A DNA stretch of 64,000 nucleotides, from assembly GCF_040938485.1 (NCBI RefSeq), contig NW_027272265.1, positions 186,001 to 250,000 on the forward strand, in the 5' to 3' direction. How positions within the stretch are numbered: position 1 is the stretch's first letter; the number at the start of each line of letters is the position of its first letter. The translations under genes were made by a program, and so were the position numbers. Positions 1 through 37,790 of this stretch are shown here, in pieces. The notes under the pieces are model-generated. The model was not told the origin of the DNA, made no database searches, and was given only the letters and a program-made list of their open reading frames with translations. The DNA is from Diadema antillarum. Taxonomy: Eukaryota.

Positions 1-14
1 TTTAAATCATACCA

Positions 15-40
15 ATGATGATGATGATAATAATAATAAC

Positions 41-90
<50 letters not shown>

Positions 91-105
91 TAATAACAAT
101 AACAA
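15..105. repeat. (AAT/GAT/AAC)n trinucleotide microsatellite
   Basis: Direct reading: long run of aat with gat/aac variants. Confidence 0.95.
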
Positions 106-111
106 CAGTAG

Positions 112-450
112 CTAGAAAAGCACTCGGAGAGTGCAGACCTCCACCAAATTCGCGAAAATTAAACCCTCGCGAATAAGCTTATGCAGTATACAAACTTCAA
201 ATACGCACTGCTGAAACTCTAAATTCATTGACCCCGTTTACAAAAAAGATTTTACCTTCAAAAATCTCCAGAAATTCCCATATCACCAGTCTACCACAAG
301 TTTATCATCTGTTTCTTGTGTCATTATCAACTTTTTCCTGCAAGTTCATTCAAATCTGATCACAGCTTCTTGAGTTATTTTGAAAACATCAGACAAGCAA
401 ACAAACCAACCAATGCCGATGAAAACATAACCGCCTTCCTTGGTGGAGGT
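112..450 (+). repeat. Interspersed repeat; another copy at ~31033-31480
   Basis: Both copies start ctagaaaagcactc...cagacctcc(a/g)ccaa and end aaaacataacc...ccttggtggaggta. Confidence 0.65.
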
Positions 451-774
451 AATAATAAAAATAACAATAATCATAATAACAACAACAGAACAGAGATCAA
501 CAAGAATAGCAACAATGAGCAATGCTATTTTTGACTAGTTCTTTTCAAGTTCTTGAATTTTTCAAGAGAATTCTCATGAAAACAGCAAGAACATGTGTGC
601 CGAAACGTCAGGAGTGGGTAGTGCCCTTGTAACAAATCAATAAGAGGGGTAGTGAGGTTGCAACATTGCTATACATAGTATAAGATTGAAGTTAGATGTT
701 AAATTCCTCTGATACTAACAATTGTATAGTAAGGTTAGATTTGCTTTCTGCTGACACTAGCAATGGTGTGGTAT

Positions 775-985
775 ACATACATGTACAAATAAGCTGTTAT
801 TTTCACGAATGAGGTCTAAGACATTTTTTGCGAGATGTTGTTTTTGCAAATTGACCAGGGGATATTGTAATTGCACTATTACCCCAGCACATTTGACATT
901 TTGATGTGTTGATAAATTTGCGGTCCAACAGTGATTCACGAAATTCACAAAAATGAAACCCTCAAGAAAATAACAGCTTATACAG
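775..985. mobile_element. MITE with terminal inverted repeats
   Basis: taagctgttattttc (~788) is the reverse complement of gaaaataacagctta (~966). Similar elements at ~27422-27645 and ~59385-59480. Confidence 0.6.
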
Positions 986-1075
986 TATAGGCCTGTCACC
1001 ATTTACAATACACAGCCAAATTCAAAAATGCTGAATCAGAGAGATGCACACGGCAAGTCTGTACAAAATACAAAC

Positions 1076-1247
1076 CTGAAGAATCAGGGACAGGCTCTGT
1101 TGGCGAGTGGTCAACTGGTTGTTGAAGCCATCAAAGTCACTGTCAACGCTTTTCCGAGTCCATAGTTTCTTGAAGTCTCTCATGCCACTGAGTTTATCCA
1201 GGAAAGCCTTGATCTGTTGAAAGCAATCTCTCAGATCCTTAAGTATC
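1076..1247 (-). CDS. MLKL-like: MLKL-like protein, coding exon 2 (second half of the four-helix bundle); gene continues beyond the window start
   Basis: Acceptor ttttgtttttttatcaag|G and donor CTTCAG|gtttgt; 172 nt; its phase matches the phase-2 end of exon 1. Translation (R)ILKDLRDCFQQIKAFLDKLSGMRDFKKLWTRKSVDSDFDGFNNQLTTRQQSLSLILQ aligns without gaps to remembered human MLKL (T)[57 protein letters not shown]. Not in the ORF track because it has no ATG. Confidence 0.85.
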
Positions 1248-3339
1248 CTTGATAAAAAAACAAAATGACAGTGTTTTTTGTTTAATCTTTTTTTTTTCAG
1301 AATGAGTCTTAACCCTCATGCACGGCTTCTGATCTGCTCTCTTATTAAGTGAACATTTGGATAATGGATATTTTCATGGTTTCCTTCGAAATCACATCAG
1401 GGATATACATACAATAACAAAATGATATGCTAGGCCCCAGAACTCAAATACCGGTTCATAGTTCTGCATGAGGGTTATGATCGCTATGATACGTGTACAT
1501 AAAACCCTAAACTTAGCCTGAATCTTATGGTGGGGTCTATCTATCATTATTTTGCCAGGTCAGAGAGTAGTAAATTGACTTTGCAAACAAGCCCTAAAAT
1601 GATGATAATTCATATTATGCCTTTTATAGAGCTCTTTGTGACAAAGGAAGAGATAGCATTATACAATGACTCAGATATTTCTAATAATGAGTATCGCTGT
1701 TTTGGTTACTTTTCGCTACTTCAGTGTGTTCTAATTTTCACTAATCATATATTCAAACCAAAGAAGTTTCAATCCTAGGCTACACGAGGCTTTAATCCAT
1801 CCCCCTGGTGTATCAATCATCAACAATGAGATTCTTCTCACTACCACTCGAGGGTGAACTGTACCATAACGTCTGTGATTTCATAGCACTGTACATGTTA
1901 CCCACTTTAATAGTAATAGCTGAATTTACACTCCAGTAAAACTTTTACAGTGCATATTTGAACATTTGAACATTTACATTACATACTCCTAGTCCTAGCT
2001 TTGGCTGCTCCTTGGTTGCACATACGCTAGCATGTTAGCATATAGATGAGGGGTTTTAACAGCGACCAGCCCAAACGCTATGGTATAACTGTGTAAAAGG
2101 AGTGCCCAGGGGTTAAATGAGGGGTGAACCTACTGCTTTGTGTCTCCTCGTGTGTCACAAAGCAATTTTACGGGGCATGTGAATAGTTAGCACTACTAGT
2201 AGGTGAGTAGATCGTATCACCGGATGCTTTTTTTTTTTGGTGGCTTTGAATCCCGTACTCAGAGGATGAAATTTCGGCTAAAAATAACACCACTTATTCT
2301 TGCACAGACTCCTGGAAATTACGAATTTAGCCAACTTATGTCAATTGTTCGCTCCAGTTTTTAGAAAATATGCTTCAAACATACCCCTCTAAAAAAAGTT
2401 GTCTTTTTGCGCGGTGCAAAATCGCGTAGTAATTCCGGACAAGATTTTCGCAATGAAATAATCGACGTCTTTCGCACCTAGTCCTTTCACCAGAATCACA
2501 TTCATCTAACAAATCACCGTACGTACACATTCTCACCGAGCGGATGACAAAGAAAAAAATCGGCAAATGAGGCTAAAATTTCGTATTTATACGGTAAAAT
2601 GTCTGTCTCGAACATTTCAAACAGTTCACGCAATAAAACCTTGTGAGAAATCAACAACTTCTATTTTACGTGCTTTGTCTATGGGAGCTGCATGCGCGGG
2701 TGACGAGTTGCGGGCCCCTTCCTTAGCGCACAACTATTCCGCATCGTTCGCGTTTGAGAATGATAGCTACAAATTTCCGATATCAATCAGTGAACTTTTG
2801 GTTCTATTCCAATCTTTAGCATTTTTCCTGTATGTGAGTGGGATTTCATAGAATTTCATCAGTCACGAAATGTGATTCAAACATGCATAAATATTAACTA
2901 TGATGAGGTGCGGGTCACTCAACTATAAATTTGAGGTAAAATGTGAATTTATTAGTGTTTTTACATTTTTATGTCGCGTTTTTTGCGATTTCGGTCCACA
3001 CAAAGTTCTGTGAGGTTAATCTATGAAGTCTCGCGCATACAGAATGTCATTAGTACGCAAAAATGTGAGTGTCGGTCCTGTAATACCATGGTGTCCGGCA
3101 ATACCATACCTGTATATACCTATGGCTACACATTACAAGCTCTTTGATCATTAATTTACCAAAAGTATTGTGCATAATGCTCATGGGAAACTAGCTACAT
3201 GTGTATTTAATTTGATGAGGCTGCCACTCCTCTGAGATTTTGTTACATTCCCACTGCAGACTCATCATTTGCAGATTGAAACAAATCTGAAAGTATTACA
3301 ACAGCCTAATCATGTCTATTTGATGTGCTCAAATTGCAC

Positions 3340-3770
3340 TGAATATGTGCTTTCGTAAACATCAAACCAGATATTTTCCTAGCACTGTACAAGGCTTTGG
3401 TTCAACCACATTTGCAATATTGCAGTGTTGCATGGAGACCGAGGTTTAATGACTGATGACAGTGAAGAACAACCAAACTGTTTCCTGGACTCAGCACCAT
3501 TTCTTACAGTGAGAGACTCATGAAGCTTAATCTTTATTCTTTGCATTACCGGAGGGAAAGAGGGGACATGATCCAGGTCTTCAAAATACTACATGGTATA
3601 GATAGAATCAACACACAGTCTTTCTTTGTAGGTGTACAATCAGCAGTATCATGGAACAAGAGGCCACCCCTTCAAATTATTTACCACCCATTGTTGATTG
3701 AACATCCGCAGCAACTTTTTTAGCAAAAGGGTCATCCAGTCATGGAACAGTTTGCTTTCATCACTCCTGA
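3340..3770 (+). mobile_element. CR1-clade LINE 3' fragment (degraded RT C-terminus) in the MLKL-like intron
   Basis: Reads ..LALYKALVQPHLQYCSVAWRP.. then ..SYSERLMKLNLYSLHYRRERGDMIQVFKILHGID.. with stops and frameshifts; typical CR1 ORF2 tail motifs. Confidence 0.85.
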
Positions 3771-4260
3771 CATCCACTATCACAATGTAGATCATTCTTT
3801 TAAACATGGTTTAAGATCTAGACACGTTCTGTCTGACATCAACGCTCACACTTGATATAGACTGTTACCTGTGCTACCAAGCGCTGACGACCGGTAGACC
3901 AACAGGACCTATACCTACACTCCCGTAGAGATGATGATGATGATAAGAATATGTTGTAACAGTTAGTGAAGAAAAAAAAAATGCAGAACATTGATCATGC
4001 AACAACGTAAATCTACACCGATAATCCCACACATGATCTGCTGGGCTAAACCCCCGAGATAAAGGAGCCACTTGCAGTGCTATCAACTTAGATGGAAAAG
4101 TCCGTCTGTCTGTCAGCAGGAGTTTTTTTAAAATCATTTTTTATCAAATTTACTTTTAACGTTTAGTTTTTCTGAGGGGATTCCGTGAAGCCACTCTAAT
4201 AGCCATACGTAAACCTCACTAGCGACCCCAACCCTTACCGAGCGCCCCGCGCCGGGGTTA

Positions 4261-4932
4261 AAGCCTGGTAACACAGCGCTTTACGGCTTAATCATGGCCA
4301 ATAAAAAACATATCAAAAAGTGGTCTCCCGTGAAGCAGACGATGTTGTTTGTGTTGATGTCGAGTTTAAGATGAGCTACTACGGTCGATTTGTAGATGTG
4401 GCGGGACACGGGGAAAAATCGGAACAGCGTCGGACGCGGTAAAAAGTTTTGAACTGTTCAAAATTTTATACCGCTGACAACTACGGGCGGCACACATGGT
4501 AAAGACGTTTGAACGCACGTGAAACACACGTGTTACTGATAATCCGTGTTCCGGTAGTGATTAAAACTTGGAGAGGCGGGTAAGACGCGAAAGTTTAGCG
4601 GTCTGTCATGGGCAGAGCATGGTCATTTGACGTACGTTACGTGTTGGTATCACGGGAAATGGTGTGTATTTTATAGCGGCTTATCACTGACAAATGGATT
4701 TTTCCGTGTACATACACGTGGCTGGACGTGGTTAGCCGTGCTTTGGCATAGGCAGTGCTTCAGCAGCTGGAACAGCCGCCAACGGCAATACCCCGCACAA
4801 AGCACGGCCAAACCAAAATTGACCAAAAAATTACCTCTTACGACCACGACGTCCATGTCCACGTCCACGTACTAGATTTTCATAACTTTTTGTAAGTGAT
4901 TTAGACGTGTAGTGCTGTGTGACCGGGGCTAA
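4261..4932. mobile_element. Non-autonomous DNA element (PIF/Harbinger-like ends)
   Basis: Imperfect TIRs agcctggtaacacagc / gctgtgtgaccggggct. Superfamily is an inference. Confidence 0.55.
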
Positions 4933-5289
4933 ATTAAGCCAGACGTAGTCTCCGCTGAACAGATGACTACGCCTATCCCCAGCCATATGACAATTAAGAT
5001 ACAGACTGATCTTTCGCTCAAGTGCCAACTTTTCATACCGGTACCTCGTCAGCTCAGCCTCCCTGCCCTGGTACTACTGAAATGCCAATGGTAGATGCAT
5101 GATATACACGAGTACTTGAAGAACGTAAAGTTTTATACCTTGACAGTTATATTTAAGCAATCATTATTTGGTTGAACGTCCTTGCTCAGTACACATGTCC
5201 AGATTATTTTCATGTTCGCATTTAGTACAGCTTAAAAGATTAGTATTATTTGTGAGGCTGATCATGTCATATTTTGCAAATTTGCAGAA

Positions 5290-5383
5290 GCCTGAACAAG
5301 TTGAGTGTACTTTAGTCAAGAAAGAAAATATTGTAACGCGTAGTGGTAGAAAAATTAAGCATCCAGTGATACTCGATCTATAG
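5290..5383 (+). mobile_element. Possible remnant of a Ty3/Gypsy pol C-terminus
   Basis: ORF 5168..5383 ends TRSGRKIKHPVILDL*, resembling the TRSGRxxKxPxxLDL tail of Gypsy integrases; nothing else of the element is recognisable. Confidence 0.35.
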
Positions 5384-5434
5384 TAGTTGTATGTTACGAT
5401 TGTTTGGTCGTATGGTTCATACGATTAGTTAACC

Positions 5435-5900
5435 TAGCTTGCCAGATGGTGATTTCGGGAACCAAAAATGGTAAAATTTGGTGAGTTTTGAAGTTGTTTG
5501 GTGACAAATTTTAGTCTGGTAACCAAATCAAAATTTGGTGATTTTGGGTAAGTTTTTGGTGATTTTGAGACCAGATGAAAAATAATCACACTAAGTGAAA
5601 GAGAAAATGCATTTTTGCCCAAAGTTTCCCCTTGTTCCCTGCAGAAACATTACATGTGCCCCTTTTTGGTCACTCAACACACAAACACAAAAATCCATAC
5701 ACATTTTGCATTGTGTATGTGACTACGGCGCGCCGTGGTATTGCACCGAAACTTGCGCAGTGTTTGATGAAGGTTTATTGACATCATTTTGCCCTGAAAT
5801 TGAAGCCTTACCTACGCTTTTTCTAAATTTGGTGATTCTTTATGGCTTTTGGTGATTTTTCACATACCTTTTGGTGATTTTGCTCTGTTGGGACCTGGCA
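5435..5900. mobile_element. MITE (hAT-like ends) with internal ttttggtgatttt repeats
   Basis: ttgccag at ~5439 and ctggcaa at ~5896 are inverted; multiple tggtgatttt units inside. Confidence 0.5.
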
Positions 5901-6109
5901 ACATATCACTGTGTATATATGTTTAGTAGGTATACCAAGACTATTTTATATGGGCCATTTTGGTGTTTATATAGGCCTACAAATCATTGACATTGTATAT
6001 CACAAACATGTATTCTTTGTTATTGTAATGACCATGTCTTGTATTTATGTGTTGTACTCGGAATGGGGTCGGAAGAGTCAATAAAATCTATCTAAATTTA
6101 TCTATCTAC

Positions 6110-6306
6110 CTGTGTAGGTCGGGATCGGGCTCTGCCTCCAAGTCCTTCTGTAATTCTTTGATGGGGCGGTAGATGACTTCGACGCGCTTGGCCAGAGTTT
6201 TCGAGCGGTTCTTGAATGTTTTGACCATCTGAACAGCTTCGTATATGTACTTTCCTACAGAAATGATATCTTTAATGACATCAATGGCTGGTAAAACAGC
6301 AGCCAT
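6110..6306 (-). CDS. MLKL-like: MLKL-like protein, coding exon 1 (N-terminal half of the four-helix bundle)
   Basis: ATG at 6306 in aaaATGG context; donor CACAG|gtagat at 6110/6109 (phase 2). MAAVLPAIDVIKDIISVGKYIYEAVQMVKTFKNRSKTLAKRVEVIYRPIKELQ aligns gaplessly from I8 to remembered human MLKL [46 protein letters not shown]. Joined CDS complement(join(1076..1247,6110..6306)) is 123 codons. Confidence 0.85.
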
Positions 6307-6808
6307 TTTCACACGATATTCACACAATCGAATTTTCTATTAAAATTAGGTGGTTGTGGATCCGGTGGTATGCAGCAGCACAGATGCTACCATCCGCAGT
6401 GTGTGAGTCGAGCCGGAATGTGTTCCACCGCCAGCTGTGGCTGTACTGTATGTAGTATTCTATCGTTGTAGTGTACGATCTCTGTGCACGCGCACGTGGT
6501 GGGATTTACTGTACTGTAGTACGTAGTGTAGATTCATGAGATATTGACCTCCACTTCCGCATTTTGTTTAGTACCATTCGAGGATCCAGTTAGCCAGCTA
6601 CTAGTATTACAGTTAGGGGGGATACAATGTATGCCCGTGTAGTGTAGGATTTGATATGATTATATCACCGAAAAATAAATTATTGTAATATCATCATTGC
6701 TACGTGGTAAAACGATCATAATGCAATGCTGACAATAATAATGGTAAATAATCGTTAAACCAAGATGTCGCATAACCCCCCCCCCCCCATTCGTCTCGTC
6801 TGGCTTCA

Positions 6809-10256: not shown

Positions 10257-10761
10257 GTAGCAAATGTAATAGGCCTATTGCCACAACACACAAGTGAAGT
10301 TTAGGAAAATCGAATAATCAGTTCCAAAGTCGTGAGGAGTTTTGTTTGTTTGTTTGTTTGCTTGTTTTGGTTGAGTGTGTTTTGTTTTGTTTTGTTTGTT
10401 TTTTAGTTGATGCGGTTACTGGGTGCTAAATAGACCTGTAGACAACGATTCTTGATTCATATCCCATAGGCCTATTATTAGGGCTCGACACTAGCACTTT
10501 TCTCTGGTACGCCCCCTCAGGCCACTAAAGTCTTTGTATGCGGTATACGAAATTTTGCTTCCTGAAAAAGAAAATAAAACAAAACAAAAAGGAAACATAA
10601 AATTTCACTTTGAATTTCTAGCTCGATCGGACCACCACAAGATAACCTTCTGGGAAATTTTGTGGACTGACATCAATTTTTAGTGGCGCCGGATAACCAA
10701 GCCAGTGCAGATGTCTATCCCTTTTATACACGATAGACACTTGGGGAAAAAGATACTCCCG

Positions 10762-11395
10762 TAAAGGGGAAATCCAGTCCAAATTATATAAGTTAGTCTG
10801 ATAAGAAAGAGTAAAATATTACGAGTTCAGCGGTATAAATTAGATCGAAAACGGATGAAAAATAAGAAAGTCATGACATTCGAAGTTTCACTATTTTGGG
10901 AGGAAACAGTTCTTGAACAGTCAATATGATAGGATACAAATTGCAAAGTGAGCATGTCATTCCCTCACAACTCCCCATATAGTTTGTACATAAAATTTTG
11001 AAATTTCCGGTTTTTCATTCAAACGCAATTATGCCTGAGGCTCAAATCCTCATATTATTATCTAAGTGATCACTATTCTGAAGTTATTCAACCAAGTATT
11101 ATGTCATATGTTTCAGACTTCAATGGCAGAAACATCAAATTTTCGTCTTTTAATGTTTTTCGATACACGATCAATGAAAAATCGTGAGGGTATGACATGG
11201 TTAGCTCACTCATTTGCATATACACGTGTATTCATACCCACTGTACAAGAACTGTTTTGAAGAAAGTATTGAAACTTCAAAATTTCATAACTTCCTTATT
11301 TTTTATCCAATTTCAGTCAAATTTTTACTGTTGCACTCGTAAAATTTTACTTTTTTATCAGACAAACTTATATTTGGACTGGATTTCCCCTTTAA
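10762..11395. mobile_element. Kolobok-like MITE (TTAA-type flanks, AGG ends)
   Basis: TIR aaaggggaaatccagtccaaat / atttggactggatttccccttt followed by aa. Confidence 0.7.
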
Positions 11396-12828
11396 CTGGT
11401 AGGAATCGATCTGTTTATAGAGCAGATTTACTGAATAGGGCCTAGTCTTCTCATTTTTTTTTTTTGCCCCTCATTCTGTTGTAATTGCGTAATCACATTC
11501 CAACCTATATATACTCATCTAGCACTGTTACAACCCCAGATTATGACAAAGCAGAAGTAAAAATTATGGAAATTGTATTCGTTATTCTGCAGGTTTGTTA
11601 ATCCGAAACAGACAAGTGCCCCATACCTAAAGAGGTTCGTTTAATCGTAAATAAAAGGATTCATTAATCCGAATATTTCATTGTGGTGTTGGTAAGTTCA
11701 TTATTCCAAGGTTAGCGATCTGCAATCCTGAAAGATAAAATTATAATAAGATTCGCTGTTCCAAAAGTTTTTTAATCCAAAAACGAAAGAAGGTCAGATG
11801 GTTTATTGATCTGAAATAGAAATATGGTTCGTTAATCCGAAAATGGAATAAGGTTCATAATTCGAAAATTGAATAATCTGAGGCATAGATGGGGGGGGGG
11901 GGGGGGGGGACATGACCAGGGACATAGGTTGGATTCTTTCAAAGTGGTGATCTGTACAAGAAAGAGTGATGTTTGTTTGTTGTTTTTTTTTGCATTTGAG
12001 TGCCTCCTTGTAAATTTTAAGTTCTGTATAAAGTCGTTATAAGTCATGCATGGTTCATCAAAAAAAAAAAAAAAAAGGTCCAAGACTTCCTTGGATTTTG
12101 AAATCCCTATTTGGTCCAATTCGGAGAAAAAAAAATATTGTATTACAAATATAAGCTTGAATGTAGTGACCAATCCAAACATACTTATAAACAAACAAAC
12201 AAACAAACAAACAAACAAACACCTTAATAGTAATCATATATCACAAAATACTAATCACCTCTCAATTACTCCGTTACATATGCTTTATTTCTCCCTGATT
12301 TTACCCTGTACTTACATTTACAGCTTGTTGGCTCGGAGCAATACTCATCAAATATCATTAGACAGATTGCTCTCTCTGAGAAAAAAACAACCAAACATTT
12401 GAAATGCATTAAGTAACAATATCAAAAAGTCCTGTCATTATCTGTATTCAAAAGAAAATTGAAATAGATATTTGCAATCATGTAAATCAAACATGTGTGA
12501 GCAATAAACTTATGGATAAGTATAGTCAGAATTTGTTCAATGTTCTTACCATTTATCCATTGCCTAATCCATGCATTTCAATGAATCTACCATCTTCTCT
12601 TCCTCTCTCCCATTCTTATTCCTTTTCTCTTTTCTAAACATCCATCCCAATTTTTGTAGTATTGTTGCGCATGCAGCTTTCTTGTTTGTACTTTGGTGTG
12701 TCTCAGCTTGTGTATTAACCCGTCTTGTATCTTGTTTGTTAGTCTCATCTCTGCTGAATTTATACACTTTTAGTTTTATCAACCCCCGGAACAATATGTA
12801 TTCATGAATGTATTGTGTTTCATCTGGT

Positions 12829-35688: not shown

Positions 35689-37790
35689 GACTGATGTTCT
35701 ACCACTCCTACAAGAAGGACAAGGCGATTAAGTTCTGGCAGGAAACAGTAGATTGTGACCCGCAGAATCTCAATGCCCTGCAGGATCTGGCAACGGCATA
35801 CAGAAAACTTCGGAACAATAGAGAGGCAATTGAGTATGAGCGCAAAATCAAGGAACTCCTGGAAGATGCTTCAGATGATGACAGGCAGCTGATGATGGCT
35901 CGCTGTCAGCTGGAGCAGGCCTACGCCCAATTCTGGGACATCCACACAGAATCCTGGTCTGGGGTAGATAAGCGTAAGAAGCAGGTGGAGAGCTATGAGG
36001 CTGGGCTGGACTTTGCTGGAAAGCTCTATGATGAAGAACGCCACCATCTGGAAAAGAGAGACTGGCTTCTTTATACAGCACAGGCTCACGAAAGACTCTC
36101 ACATGCATTCTTTCGGATGGGAGATCATACCAACCACTTGAAGGCCATTGGTGCAGCCATTGAAATACTCCATGCTGTTCGGCAAAAGTGTGAACGAAAT
36201 GATGTATTCCTGGCAGAGGTGTGGTATGTCATGGGAAACACATTAGCCAAAAATGAAGGCAGCCTACAGTCTGATGATGTTACTCTTCCCAAAATAGTAG
36301 CTAAAAAGTACGGCAAGGAATGGAATGATCCATCTTTGTGCTACGTAAATGCACTTAAACTTGACTGTGACAATGTGTGGATTTTAGGCCGCCTGGGTGT
36401 TCACTGGTTCAAGAAAGAACAATATGATGAAGCAGTCATATTCTTGACTAAATCCATAGAAGCTGCCGACAAGCATGGAGAGGACAACCACATGAAGAAG
36501 TCATGCTGGAATGCCCTGTGTCACAGAGCAAAGATAAACATTAAGAAAGCAAAAGCCCAAAGACCACCTACTGGTGAGTCCTACTACCTACTATGGCAGG
36601 CCATGCAAGACTCAAGCAGGGCTGCTGAGTACAACTTCAGTCCAATGACTCTGGCTGTGGACGGAGAAGCACATCATCTACTAGCTCGGCACCCCCACAC
36701 TTCACACAAAGATGCAGAAGAGCTCAGAAACACTGCCCTGCAGAGATTCTATGAAGCTTCAGTCTGCCAAGATGGCCAGTCCATATCAAACACTCATCTA
36801 AAATGGGCAGAATGTCTGATGGACAAACAGGATCTCACTGCAGCCACAGATTCTTACAAAGTTGCTTTTGAAACAGCCCATGACACAAGTGGGAGTTTCA
36901 AAGCCTATATAGCCTCACAGCTCCTACGTGCCATGCTTCAGAACTTCACAAATGAGAAGGACCCTGAGTACCGGTATCTGCTATTAAAGGAGCTTGTATT
37001 CTGCTTCACACATATCTACCGCCACTGCCAGCCCACACGCTTTGAATTTGAAAGGCTTCTCTGGAAGAATGCTTCTGCAGTTCTTGATGTCATGGAATAC
37101 TTGGTCTGCAAGACTCCTCTGCCCAGTGATGAGATGTATCTCTACAAAAAAATGATTCAACCTGCTCTGAAGGAGTTCAGCAAAATGCTAAAAAAGCCAG
37201 AATTCAAAGAAAAACTACAGCAGCTGAACGTCTTTACAGATTTTAAATCAAGACTGGAGAACCTCATTCAAGGGAATGAACGGAACATCAACAATTGTCC
37301 AATGTCAGGACCAAAGAGTCCAGAGGTTGTATCCCCTAAGGATCACCATCAACCTCCTGATCACCCCCTAGCTGAGGGTGTGAAATATGATTTCTGTGTC
37401 ATCTATGATACAGGTAACTTCACAGTGGAAGGTTGGGTAGAGTTCTTTCTCCTATCTGGTCTTGAGTGCCCCTTCTACGGCCTGAAGGGATGCTTTGAAA
37501 AAAGGGACTTCAAGATGGGAGCGCTAAAACTTAATGGGGCATGGACACCTGCATTGACTCAGAGCGCCTATATTCTCATTGTACTTACCCACAATATGAA
37601 CAGAATTAGTACACTCTTGAGTGAGATGTCACAGGAAATTGAAGGGAAGGAAATCATTGTCATCCAGCGAGAAGCAACAGCAGTGCCTGTTCCATTACGC
37701 ATATGTCGCAAGTTCGACTTCACTGTGCAGCCAGACATTCCTGACTTGGCAAGGTACCTGATGCCCCGAAAGATGAGTTTATTCATGTGA
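35689..37790 (+). CDS. TTC22-like: TTC22/IFIT-like TPR-TIR protein 1, coding exon 2 (joined product 781 aa)
   Basis: Acceptor tttttacattacctag|GA completes Gly. TPR helices with DPQNLNALQDLATAY, ARCQLEQAYA, DPSLCY match remembered TTC22 motifs (PGNLNAWANLAHVY, ARCLAEQGYA, DPLDCF). C-terminal TIR: YDFCVIY..WVEFFLL..LE..KRDFKMG..SAYILIVLT. Confidence 0.92.

What the first reader, a model, noticed from the sequence alone, without database searches (positions are those of the whole stretch)
1076..6306. Invertebrate MLKL-like four-helix bundle hidden from the ORF track
Seen: two exons 4.86 kb apart splice in phase into 123 codons that align almost gaplessly with the whole human MLKL four-helix bundle, ending SLILQ versus SLLLQ. 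The C-terminal partner domain is outside the window. It could be a pseudokinase (true MLKL), an active kinase, or another module such as NACHT, which would be a novel fusion.
Basis: partly seen in the sequence, partly recalled or inferred. Interest (0 to 1): 0.7.

Follow-up and report, generated by a model that had tools for sequence, protein, structure and literature searches.

The report
Sea-urchin MLKL gene, already annotated
The two exons are the real start of the MLKL cell-death gene of the sea urchin Diadema antillarum, a four-helix killer domain joined to a dead kinase. Public databases already name this gene and echinoderm MLKL is already published, so the finding is correct but ordinary.

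Summary
Exon 1 (window 6306-6110, minus strand) and exon 2 (1247-1076) have GT/AG borders and join in phase across a 4,862-base intron. They match Pfam MLKL_N one after the other: profile positions 1-50 at E 1.4e-8, and 58-113 at E 2e-3.

Nine further exons lie left of the window (C1377:168957-184892). They encode brace helices and a kinase-like domain whose catalytic Asp and Asn are lost (HRA...R; DFG reads DNG). This is the true MLKL architecture, with no NACHT or other fusion.

The gene is not new. [quoted passage not shown] A second copy on contig C1267 (XP_071477105.1) is most likely the other haplotype of an uncollapsed assembly. Orthologues are annotated in D. setosum and Lytechinus.

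Echinoderm MLKL is in the literature:
- PMC11476962 surveys MLKL across animals and tests N-terminal domains in human cells.
- PMC11932488 shows caspase-1 activation of the sea-cucumber protein.

Lytic function and the trigger in urchins are inferred, not shown. No RNA run was listed, so junction reads could not be checked. Other agents of this scan had already identified this genome as Diadema, working on other DNA.

The parts
6110..6306 (-). MLKL coding exon 1. Runs from the ATG at 6306 and covers residues 1-65 plus 2 nt of codon 66. Encodes helices 1-2 of the four-helix bundle.
   Evidence: Translation. Pfam MLKL_N E 1.4e-8, profile 1-50. Identical to residues 1-65 of RefSeq XP_071478450.1 (P0005). 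Best PDB hit is mouse MLKL 4btf, residues 4-53.
1248..6109 (-). Intron 1 (4,862 nt), with GT at 6109-6108 and AG at 1249-1248.
   Evidence: Sequence read directly. The junction is the one used in the public models P0005, P0001 and P0004.
1076..1247 (-). MLKL coding exon 2. Covers the last base of codon 66 through residue 123 and encodes helices 3-4 of the four-helix bundle, ending SLSLILQ. The donor is CAG|gtttgt at 1075.
   Evidence: Translation. Pfam MLKL_N profile 58-113, E 2.2e-3. 100% identical in the second haplotype.
1..1075 (-). Start of intron 2. The gene continues left of the window with exons 3-11 at these C1377 coordinates: 184775-184892, 183696-183791, 183024-183150, 182140-182249, 180034-180260, 177770-177921, 173324-173385, 171414-171563, and 168957-168991 including the stop. 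To convert, window coordinate = C1377 coordinate - 186000.
   Evidence: Exon borders were read from the sequence, all GT/AG, with consistent phases. tblastn of P0005 and P0001 on the locus agrees. Pfam kinase hits fall on exons 7 and 10.

Best explanation
This is the 5' end of the single MLKL gene of the sea urchin Diadema antillarum. The coding sequence has 11 exons, spans 23.35 kb and encodes 481 codons. RefSeq lists the locus as XP_071478450.1.

The protein has three parts:
- an N-terminal four-helix bundle (residues about 4-125, encoded by the two exons in the window);
- brace helices (about 132-196);
- a C-terminal kinase-like domain (about 208-470).

The kinase-like domain keeps the beta3 Lys (K232) and the Asp of DFG (DNG 352-354). 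It has lost the catalytic Asp (HRA 332-334) and the catalytic-loop Asn (R339), so it is a regulatory pseudokinase.

By homology with vertebrate, starfish and sea-cucumber MLKL, the pseudokinase and brace most likely hold the four-helix bundle in check. On an immune trigger the bundle is released, oligomerises, binds acidic membrane lipids and permeabilises membranes, causing lytic death of coelomocytes.

Shown here: the gene structure, the domain identity, the dead catalytic motifs, intact copies in both haplotypes, and conservation in other urchins. Inferred: the killing activity and its trigger. The trigger cannot be the RIPK3 route as known in mammals, and the LxxD caspase-1 site of the sea-cucumber protein is not present at the N-terminus.
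For: Domain identity:
- Pfam MLKL_N matches exon 1 (E 1.4e-8) and exon 2 in the same order.
- The full public protein of the locus has MLKL_N at 67.4 bits plus a kinase domain at 109.5 bits.
- The best solved-structure relatives are mouse MLKL 4btf (E 3.2e-26, aligned 6-475 to 4-457) and human MLKL. Both rank ahead of RIPK4, RIPK2 and RIPK1.

Public records:
- Exact cluster look-up names P0005 as XP_071478450.1, MLKL of Diadema antillarum, on a contig of 859,647 bases. That is the length of C1377.
- P0005 maps at 100% to every exon.
- Orthologues with the same architecture are annotated in D. setosum (93% identity) and Lytechinus (48-49%). HRA, R339 and DNG are invariant among them.

Integrity:
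- All 11 exons are intact in both haplotype copies, with pN/pS about 0.35.

Literature:
- MLKL is present in Echinodermata including S. purpuratus, and starfish N-terminal domains kill HEK293T cells (PMC11476962).
- A. japonicus MLKL drives lytic coelomocyte death after caspase-1 cleavage, without phosphorylation (PMC11932488).
Against: - No RNA run was listed, so no junction reads or expression data could be seen.
- In PMC11476962, S. purpuratus N-terminal domains were tested but are not among those listed as giving robust death, so killing by an urchin four-helix bundle is not shown.
- The LxxD caspase-1 motif of AjMLKL is absent from the first 20 residues. D9 has Pro at P4 and D13 has Val at P4, and Lytechinus differs again.
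- The AlphaFold model built from a 5-row alignment was poor (mean pLDDT 43). Its Foldseek top hit, 4btf, has a TM-score of only 0.2, so there is no usable structural confirmation.
- The RHIM profile search of the genome was blank, but the tool itself warns that this is uninformative.
Confidence: 0.85

Rival explanations
1. It is a true MLKL orthologue, but in sea urchins its main role is not lytic killing. Candidate roles are membrane trafficking or endosomal work, or a scaffold role of the pseudokinase. The four-helix bundle alone would not be cytotoxic.
For: In PMC11476962 the N-terminal domains of S. purpuratus MLKL were expressed in HEK293T cells, but robust death is listed only for the starfish A. 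planci and P. miniata among echinoderms. No RIPK3-type partner is known in echinoderms (PMC11932488 discussion).
Against: The sea-cucumber orthologue does cause lytic coelomocyte death and liposome leakage. Failure in a human cell line may be species-specific, as with mouse MLKL(1-180) in human cells. The four-helix bundle is conserved between Diadema and Lytechinus.
Confidence: 0.15
2. The kinase-like domain is catalytically active, or at least signals by binding ATP. The protein would then be a four-helix-bundle kinase rather than a pseudokinase effector.
For: The beta3 Lys (K232), a Glu at the alphaC spacing (E249, 17 residues after K232, as K236/E253 in AjMLKL), the Asp of DFG (D352), two of three Gly-loop glycines, and APE are all retained. 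AjMLKL is predicted to take a closed, active-like conformation.
Against: The catalytic base Asp is Ala (HRA). The Lys/Asn positions of HRDLKxxN are Thr and Arg. The Phe of DFG is Asn. All of these are invariant in four urchin species. The nearest solved relatives are MLKL pseudokinases.
Confidence: 0.05
3. The locus is a decaying fragment or pseudogene, or the C1267 copy is a true paralogue rather than an allele.
For: Two copies exist in the assembly. The RefSeq model of this copy has a different C-terminus of 38 residues with no homologue.
Against: All 11 exons are open with GT/AG borders in both copies. They differ at 16 of 1,422 coding positions and have no stops. Non-coding flanks are collinear at 94-98%. 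The published 1.75-Gb, 2,964-contig assembly of this species retains both haplotypes, with 84.4% of BUSCOs duplicated and a haploid size of about 0.7-0.9 Gb (PMC13511894). The conserved last exon is intact here too.
Confidence: 0.03

Closest known systems
Vertebrate MLKL (mouse 4btf, human 6lk5/2msv)
   Same: The order of parts is the same: four-helix bundle, brace helices, C-terminal pseudokinase. It aligns end to end with mouse MLKL (E 3.2e-26). The helix-4 end SLSLILQ lies opposite ELSLLLQ. The catalytic loop begins HR followed by a non-Asp residue, as in mouse HRN.
   Different: Identity is only about 20-25%. The urchin protein keeps the Asp of DFG (DNG) where MLKL has GFE. No RIPK3 is known in echinoderms (literature), so the activating kinase route of mammals is unlikely.
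Echinoderm MLKL: A. japonicus AjMLKL (PIK49054.1) and the S. purpuratus, Lytechinus and starfish MLKLs of PMC11476962 and PMC11932488
   Same: It belongs to the same phylum-level clade and has the same 4HB-plus-STYKc architecture and a similar length (481-525 aa, against 491). It is 48-49% identical to the Lytechinus MLKLs.
   Different: The 14-LVAD-17 caspase-1 site of AjMLKL has no LxxD counterpart in the first 20 residues of the Diadema protein. The Diadema genome shows one locus with two alleles, whereas several copies are reported for S. purpuratus. I did not have the AjMLKL sequence and could not align it.
Plant MLKLs and fungal HeLo/HELL-domain proteins
   Same: They have a related N-terminal helical bundle. 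Language-model look-alikes of exon 1 include plant MLKL_N/MCAfunc and fungal HeLo clusters at scores of 0.80-0.88.
   Different: Those are only distant look-alikes scoring below 0.9. Their partner domains differ, and the urchin gene's closest relatives are animal MLKLs.

Membership tests
[quoted passage not shown] | N-terminal four-helix bundle matching the MLKL_N profile (PF22215) | tested here: met
   Exon 1 scores 34.8 bits against a cut-off of 27 (E 1.4e-8). Exon 2 matches in the same order. The locus's public protein P0005 scores 67.4 bits over residues 11-137.
[quoted passage not shown] | Helical brace linking the bundle to the kinase-like domain | tested here: inconclusive
   Exons 3-4 encode predicted helices at 132-140, 144-165 and 170-196. 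The model is of low confidence, and the region aligns only loosely to the mouse brace.
[quoted passage not shown] | C-terminal protein-kinase fold | tested here: met
   PF07714 scores 109.5 bits over residues 208-468 of P0005. Exon-wise hits fall on exons 7 and 10.
[quoted passage not shown] | Degenerate catalytic motifs (pseudokinase) | tested here: met
   Read from the sequence and alignment: HRD is HRA (332-334), the catalytic-loop Asn is R339, and DFG is DNG (352-354). The HRx-to-DxG spacing of 18 is canonical. All are invariant in Diadema and Lytechinus. Loss of activity itself was not assayed.
[quoted passage not shown] | MLKL is the closest relative over the full length, rather than another TKL kinase | tested here: met
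   The top PDB sequences are mouse and human full-length MLKL and then the horse MLKL pseudokinase, ahead of RIPK4, RIPK2 and RIPK1. NCBI names the protein and its urchin orthologues MLKL. No phylogeny was built.
[quoted passage not shown] | Membrane permeabilisation or cell killing by the released N-terminal domain | not testable with these tools
   Only literature on relatives is available: starfish N-terminal domains and sea-cucumber MLKL.
Mammalian-type necroptosis module (RIPK3-RHIM upstream of MLKL) | A RHIM-bearing RIPK3 partner and a phospho-acceptor in the activation loop | tested here: inconclusive
   The RHIM profile found nothing in the genome, but it found nothing in the controls either, so the result is uninformative. 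Ser/Thr residues in the activation loop (K357 S358 S360 K361 I362 S363) are conserved between Diadema and Lytechinus, and S360 lies opposite human T357.
Caspase-1-activated echinoderm MLKL (AjMLKL type) | An LxxD tetrapeptide near residue 17, at the N-terminus of the bundle | tested here: not met
   The first 20 residues hold D9 (P4 is Pro) and D13 (P4 is Val) and no LxxD. Lytechinus has SVVD5. The motif definition comes from PMC11932488. Cleavage at another site is not excluded.

The most novel reading that the evidence does not exclude
Sea-urchin MLKL may be switched on by a route that is neither RIPK3 phosphorylation nor the LxxD caspase-1 cut of sea cucumbers. One possibility is signalling from the neighbouring tandem TPR(-TIR) genes about 29 kb upstream, which would make this a linked sensor-executioner immune locus. 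The cluster of allelic amino-acid differences at residues 195-206 could then mark a region under diversifying selection.
Probability: 0.07. Interest if true: 0.6.

Novelty: already known. Interest (0 to 1): 0.12.

Why it matters
It matters little as a discovery. The gene already carries the name MLKL in RefSeq for this very assembly. MLKL in echinoderms has been catalogued and partly characterised (PMC11476962, PMC11932488).

The check still has three uses:
- It gives the full 11-exon structure and points to a probably wrong C-terminus in the RefSeq model of this haplotype.
- It records that the Diadema protein lacks the caspase-1 site reported for sea cucumber, so the trigger of MLKL in sea urchins remains open.

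D. antillarum suffers mass die-offs from infection, so its lytic-death genes may interest people who work on its immunity.

Tried and rejected
- **RNA evidence.** The look-up of sequencing runs for window 1000-6400 listed no run, so read laying was not used and the junction could not be checked with reads.
- **Structure.** AlphaFold2 on the 5-sequence alignment A1 gave mean pLDDT 43. Foldseek put mouse MLKL (4btf) first, but with TM-score about 0.2, so I do not count it as evidence.
- **Exon 2 alone against the PDB.** It gave only chance-level hits to IL-10.
- **ESM Atlas look-alikes of exon 1.** All MLKL_N or HeLo clusters scored below 0.9, so they are leads only.
- **RHIM profile in the genome.** The search was blank and uninformative.
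- **Joined exons.** Exons were searched one by one by reference, and every full-length analysis used public proteins returned by the tools (P0001, P0002, P0004, P0005, P0006).
- **Rejected readings.** The NACHT or other fusion partner, an active kinase, and a pseudogene fragment were all rejected.
Full report
**Observation**

On the minus strand an ATG at window 6306 opens a 197-nt exon. An in-frame TAG lies a few codons upstream, and the exon ends CAC AG|gtagat at 6110. After an acceptor ...ttatcaag| at 1249-1248, a 172-nt exon runs from 1247 to 1076 and ends CTT CAG|gtttgt. The intron is 4,862 nt. The split codon AG|G gives Arg66, and the two exons total 369 nt, or 123 codons.

I searched the exons separately by reference. 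Exon 1 matches Pfam MLKL_N (PF22215) at 34.8 bits (cut-off 27, E 1.4e-8) on profile positions 1-50. Exon 2 matches positions 58-113 (E 2.2e-3), so the two hits follow one another along the profile. Exon 1's best PDB sequence hit is mouse MLKL, residues 4-53. Exon 2 alone gives only chance-level hits.

Full-length analyses below use public proteins that the tools returned.

**The rest of the gene**

The window is G000:C1377:186001-250000. I fetched the 40 kb to its left and read the minus-strand open frames. Nine more exons follow, all with AG/GT borders and consistent phases. Their C1377 coordinates are:

| Exon | C1377 coordinates | Encodes |
|---|---|---|
| 3 | 184775-184892 | brace region |
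| 4 | 183696-183791 | brace region |
| 5 | 183024-183150 | Gly-loop EGTFGP, beta3 LLIVK |
| 6 | 182140-182249 | alphaC region |
| 7 | 180034-180260 | catalytic loop MLHRAITTTRF |
| 8 | 177770-177921 | ISDNG, activation loop, LAPE |
| 9 | 173324-173385 | |
| 10 | 171414-171563 | |
| 11 | 168957-168991 | DVVTRLNKMCL, stop |

The coding sequence is 1,443 nt (481 codons) spread over 23.35 kb. Exons 7 and 10 hit the kinase profile PF07714 on their own.

**Public records**

No RNA runs were listed and I could not join the exons. I therefore ran the representative-protein search with exon 1 alone. It returned three proteins.

The best, P0001 (481 aa), is 100% identical over exon 1. [quoted passage not shown] Its cluster mate P0005 is XP_071478450.1 (508 aa), on a contig of 859,647 bases. 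That is the length of C1377.

P0005 maps at 100% to every exon I had delimited, including the exon 1/exon 2 junction. Further annotated orthologues are D. setosum XP_072180332.1 (93% identical) and Lytechinus pictus and L. variegatus MLKL (48-49%).

Notes from other agents of this scan had already called this genome Diadema, and my look-up confirms that independently.

**Identity tests on the full-length public protein**

P0005 carries MLKL_N (67.4 bits, residues 11-137) and a kinase domain (109.5 bits, residues 208-468). Its best relatives among all PDB sequences are:
- full-length mouse MLKL (4btf, E 3.2e-26, aligned 6-475 to 4-457);
- human MLKL (6lk5, E 2.3e-24);
- the horse MLKL pseudokinase.

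RIPK4, RIPK2 and RIPK1 come only after these.

**Pseudokinase status**

This was read from the sequence and from alignment A1, using the standard kinase motifs.

Retained:
- the beta3 Lys, K232;
- a Glu 17 residues later (E249, the spacing of K236/E253 in AjMLKL), although Lytechinus has Gln in that column with Glu beside it;
- two of the three Gly-loop glycines;
- the Asp of DFG (DNG 352-354);
- APE.

Lost:
- HRD is HRA (332-334);
- the Lys and Asn positions of HRDLKxxN are T336 and R339.

The 18-residue spacing from HRx to DxG is canonical. HRA, R339 and DNG are invariant in all five urchin sequences. This is a predicted dead kinase, so the architecture is that of true MLKL and not an active-kinase or NACHT fusion.

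**One locus, two haplotypes**

The MLKL_N profile finds only two places in the genome, this locus and C1267:928543-928737. The C1267 copy carries all 11 exons in the same order. It differs at 16 of 1,422 coding positions, with no stops and a crude pN/pS of about 0.35. It is collinear at 94-98% in introns and in the intergenic DNA beyond the gene.

The published 1.75-Gb, 2,964-contig assembly of D. antillarum is reported to retain both haplotypes. It has 84.4% duplicated BUSCOs, a haploid size of about 0.7-0.9 Gb and 2.5% heterozygosity (PMC13511894). G000 has 1,754,659,819 bases in 2,963 contigs. The second copy is therefore most likely the other allele.

**How it probably works**

In mammals the pseudokinase and brace restrain the four-helix bundle. 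Once released, the bundle oligomerises and permeabilises membranes.

For echinoderms, PMC11476962 reports MLKL in five species including S. purpuratus. It reports robust killing of HEK293T cells by the N-terminal domains of two starfish. PMC11932488 shows that sea-cucumber MLKL drives lytic coelomocyte death. It is not phosphorylated and does not bind RIPK3, and it is activated by caspase-1 cleavage after 14-LVAD-17.

I infer the same executioner role for the Diadema protein, with these caveats:
- S. purpuratus N-terminal domains were tested but are not listed among the robust killers.
- The Diadema N-terminus has no LxxD motif. D9 has Pro at P4 and D13 has Val at P4, and Lytechinus differs again.
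- Activation-loop Ser/Thr residues are conserved between Diadema and Lytechinus, with S360 opposite human T357. Phosphorylation by some other kinase is therefore not excluded.
- A RHIM search of the genome was blank but uninformative.

**Attempts that failed or were inconclusive**

- AlphaFold2 on the 5-row alignment gave mean pLDDT 43. Its secondary structure shows four helices (4-26, 32-56, 62-87, 97-125) followed by three more. The Foldseek top hit was 4btf but with TM-score about 0.2, so I do not count it.
- The Atlas look-alikes of exon 1 were only leads.
- Read laying was not used, because no run was listed.

**Verdict**

The observation and the interpretation are both right, and the open question is answered: the partner is a pseudokinase, making this a true MLKL. 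The gene is already annotated as MLKL in this assembly and echinoderm MLKL is published, so novelty is nil and interest is low.

Two small by-products remain:
- The RefSeq model of this haplotype probably has a wrong C-terminus. It reads through the GTGAGT donor after exon 10 instead of using the conserved, intact last exon.
- Five of the eight allelic amino-acid differences cluster at residues 195-206, between the brace and the N-lobe.

Noticed in passing
L010:2957-2991 and L010:5301-5414 (C1377:168957-168991 and 171301-171414), left of the window: The RefSeq model of this haplotype (XP_071478450.1, 508 aa) reads through the GTGAGT donor after exon 10 and adds 38 residues with no homologue. 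The conserved last exon (DVVTRLNKMCL, stop) is intact here. The other haplotype's model, D. setosum and Lytechinus all use it. The 481-aa form is probably the real product.
   Followed up: partly
L009:7026-7148 (C1377:183026-183148), exon 5, against C1267:936782: Five of the eight amino-acid differences between the two haplotype copies cluster in residues 195-206, between the brace and the first kinase strand (T195N, D202A, D204C, G205D, E206K). The four-helix-bundle exons are identical at the nucleotide level.
   Followed up: partly
window 35694-37790, 47551-49629, 59725-62073 (+): Three long single-exon ORFs (698, 692 and 782 aa) with TPR repeats lie here, and the third has a weak TIR_2 match. 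Further copies at 90% identity lie beyond the window at C1377:253750 and 264866. They sit about 29 kb upstream of the MLKL start on the opposite strand. Another note of this scan (s1-225711) reads this as a sensor-executioner locus. I did not test any functional link.
   Followed up: partly
window 186-480, 789-988, 10760-11400, 58646-59368: Dispersed repeat families are present on dozens of contigs at 76-89% identity, probably transposon remnants. Two of them lie in MLKL intron 2.
   Followed up: no
G000:C1267:922944-951606: The whole MLKL locus and its flanks are present a second time at 94-100% identity, in inverted orientation on another contig. This fits the published statement that this 1.75-Gb assembly retains both haplotypes. 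Any gene count made on this genome should expect allelic duplicates.
   Followed up: yes
L010:4724-5271 (C1377:170724-171271), minus strand, in intron 10: A tandemly repeated open frame ('GHLRSYIKVYLQDSL...' units of about 55-60 aa, at least three copies) sits just downstream of exon 10. It is probably a repeat element and is not part of the MLKL protein.
   Followed up: no
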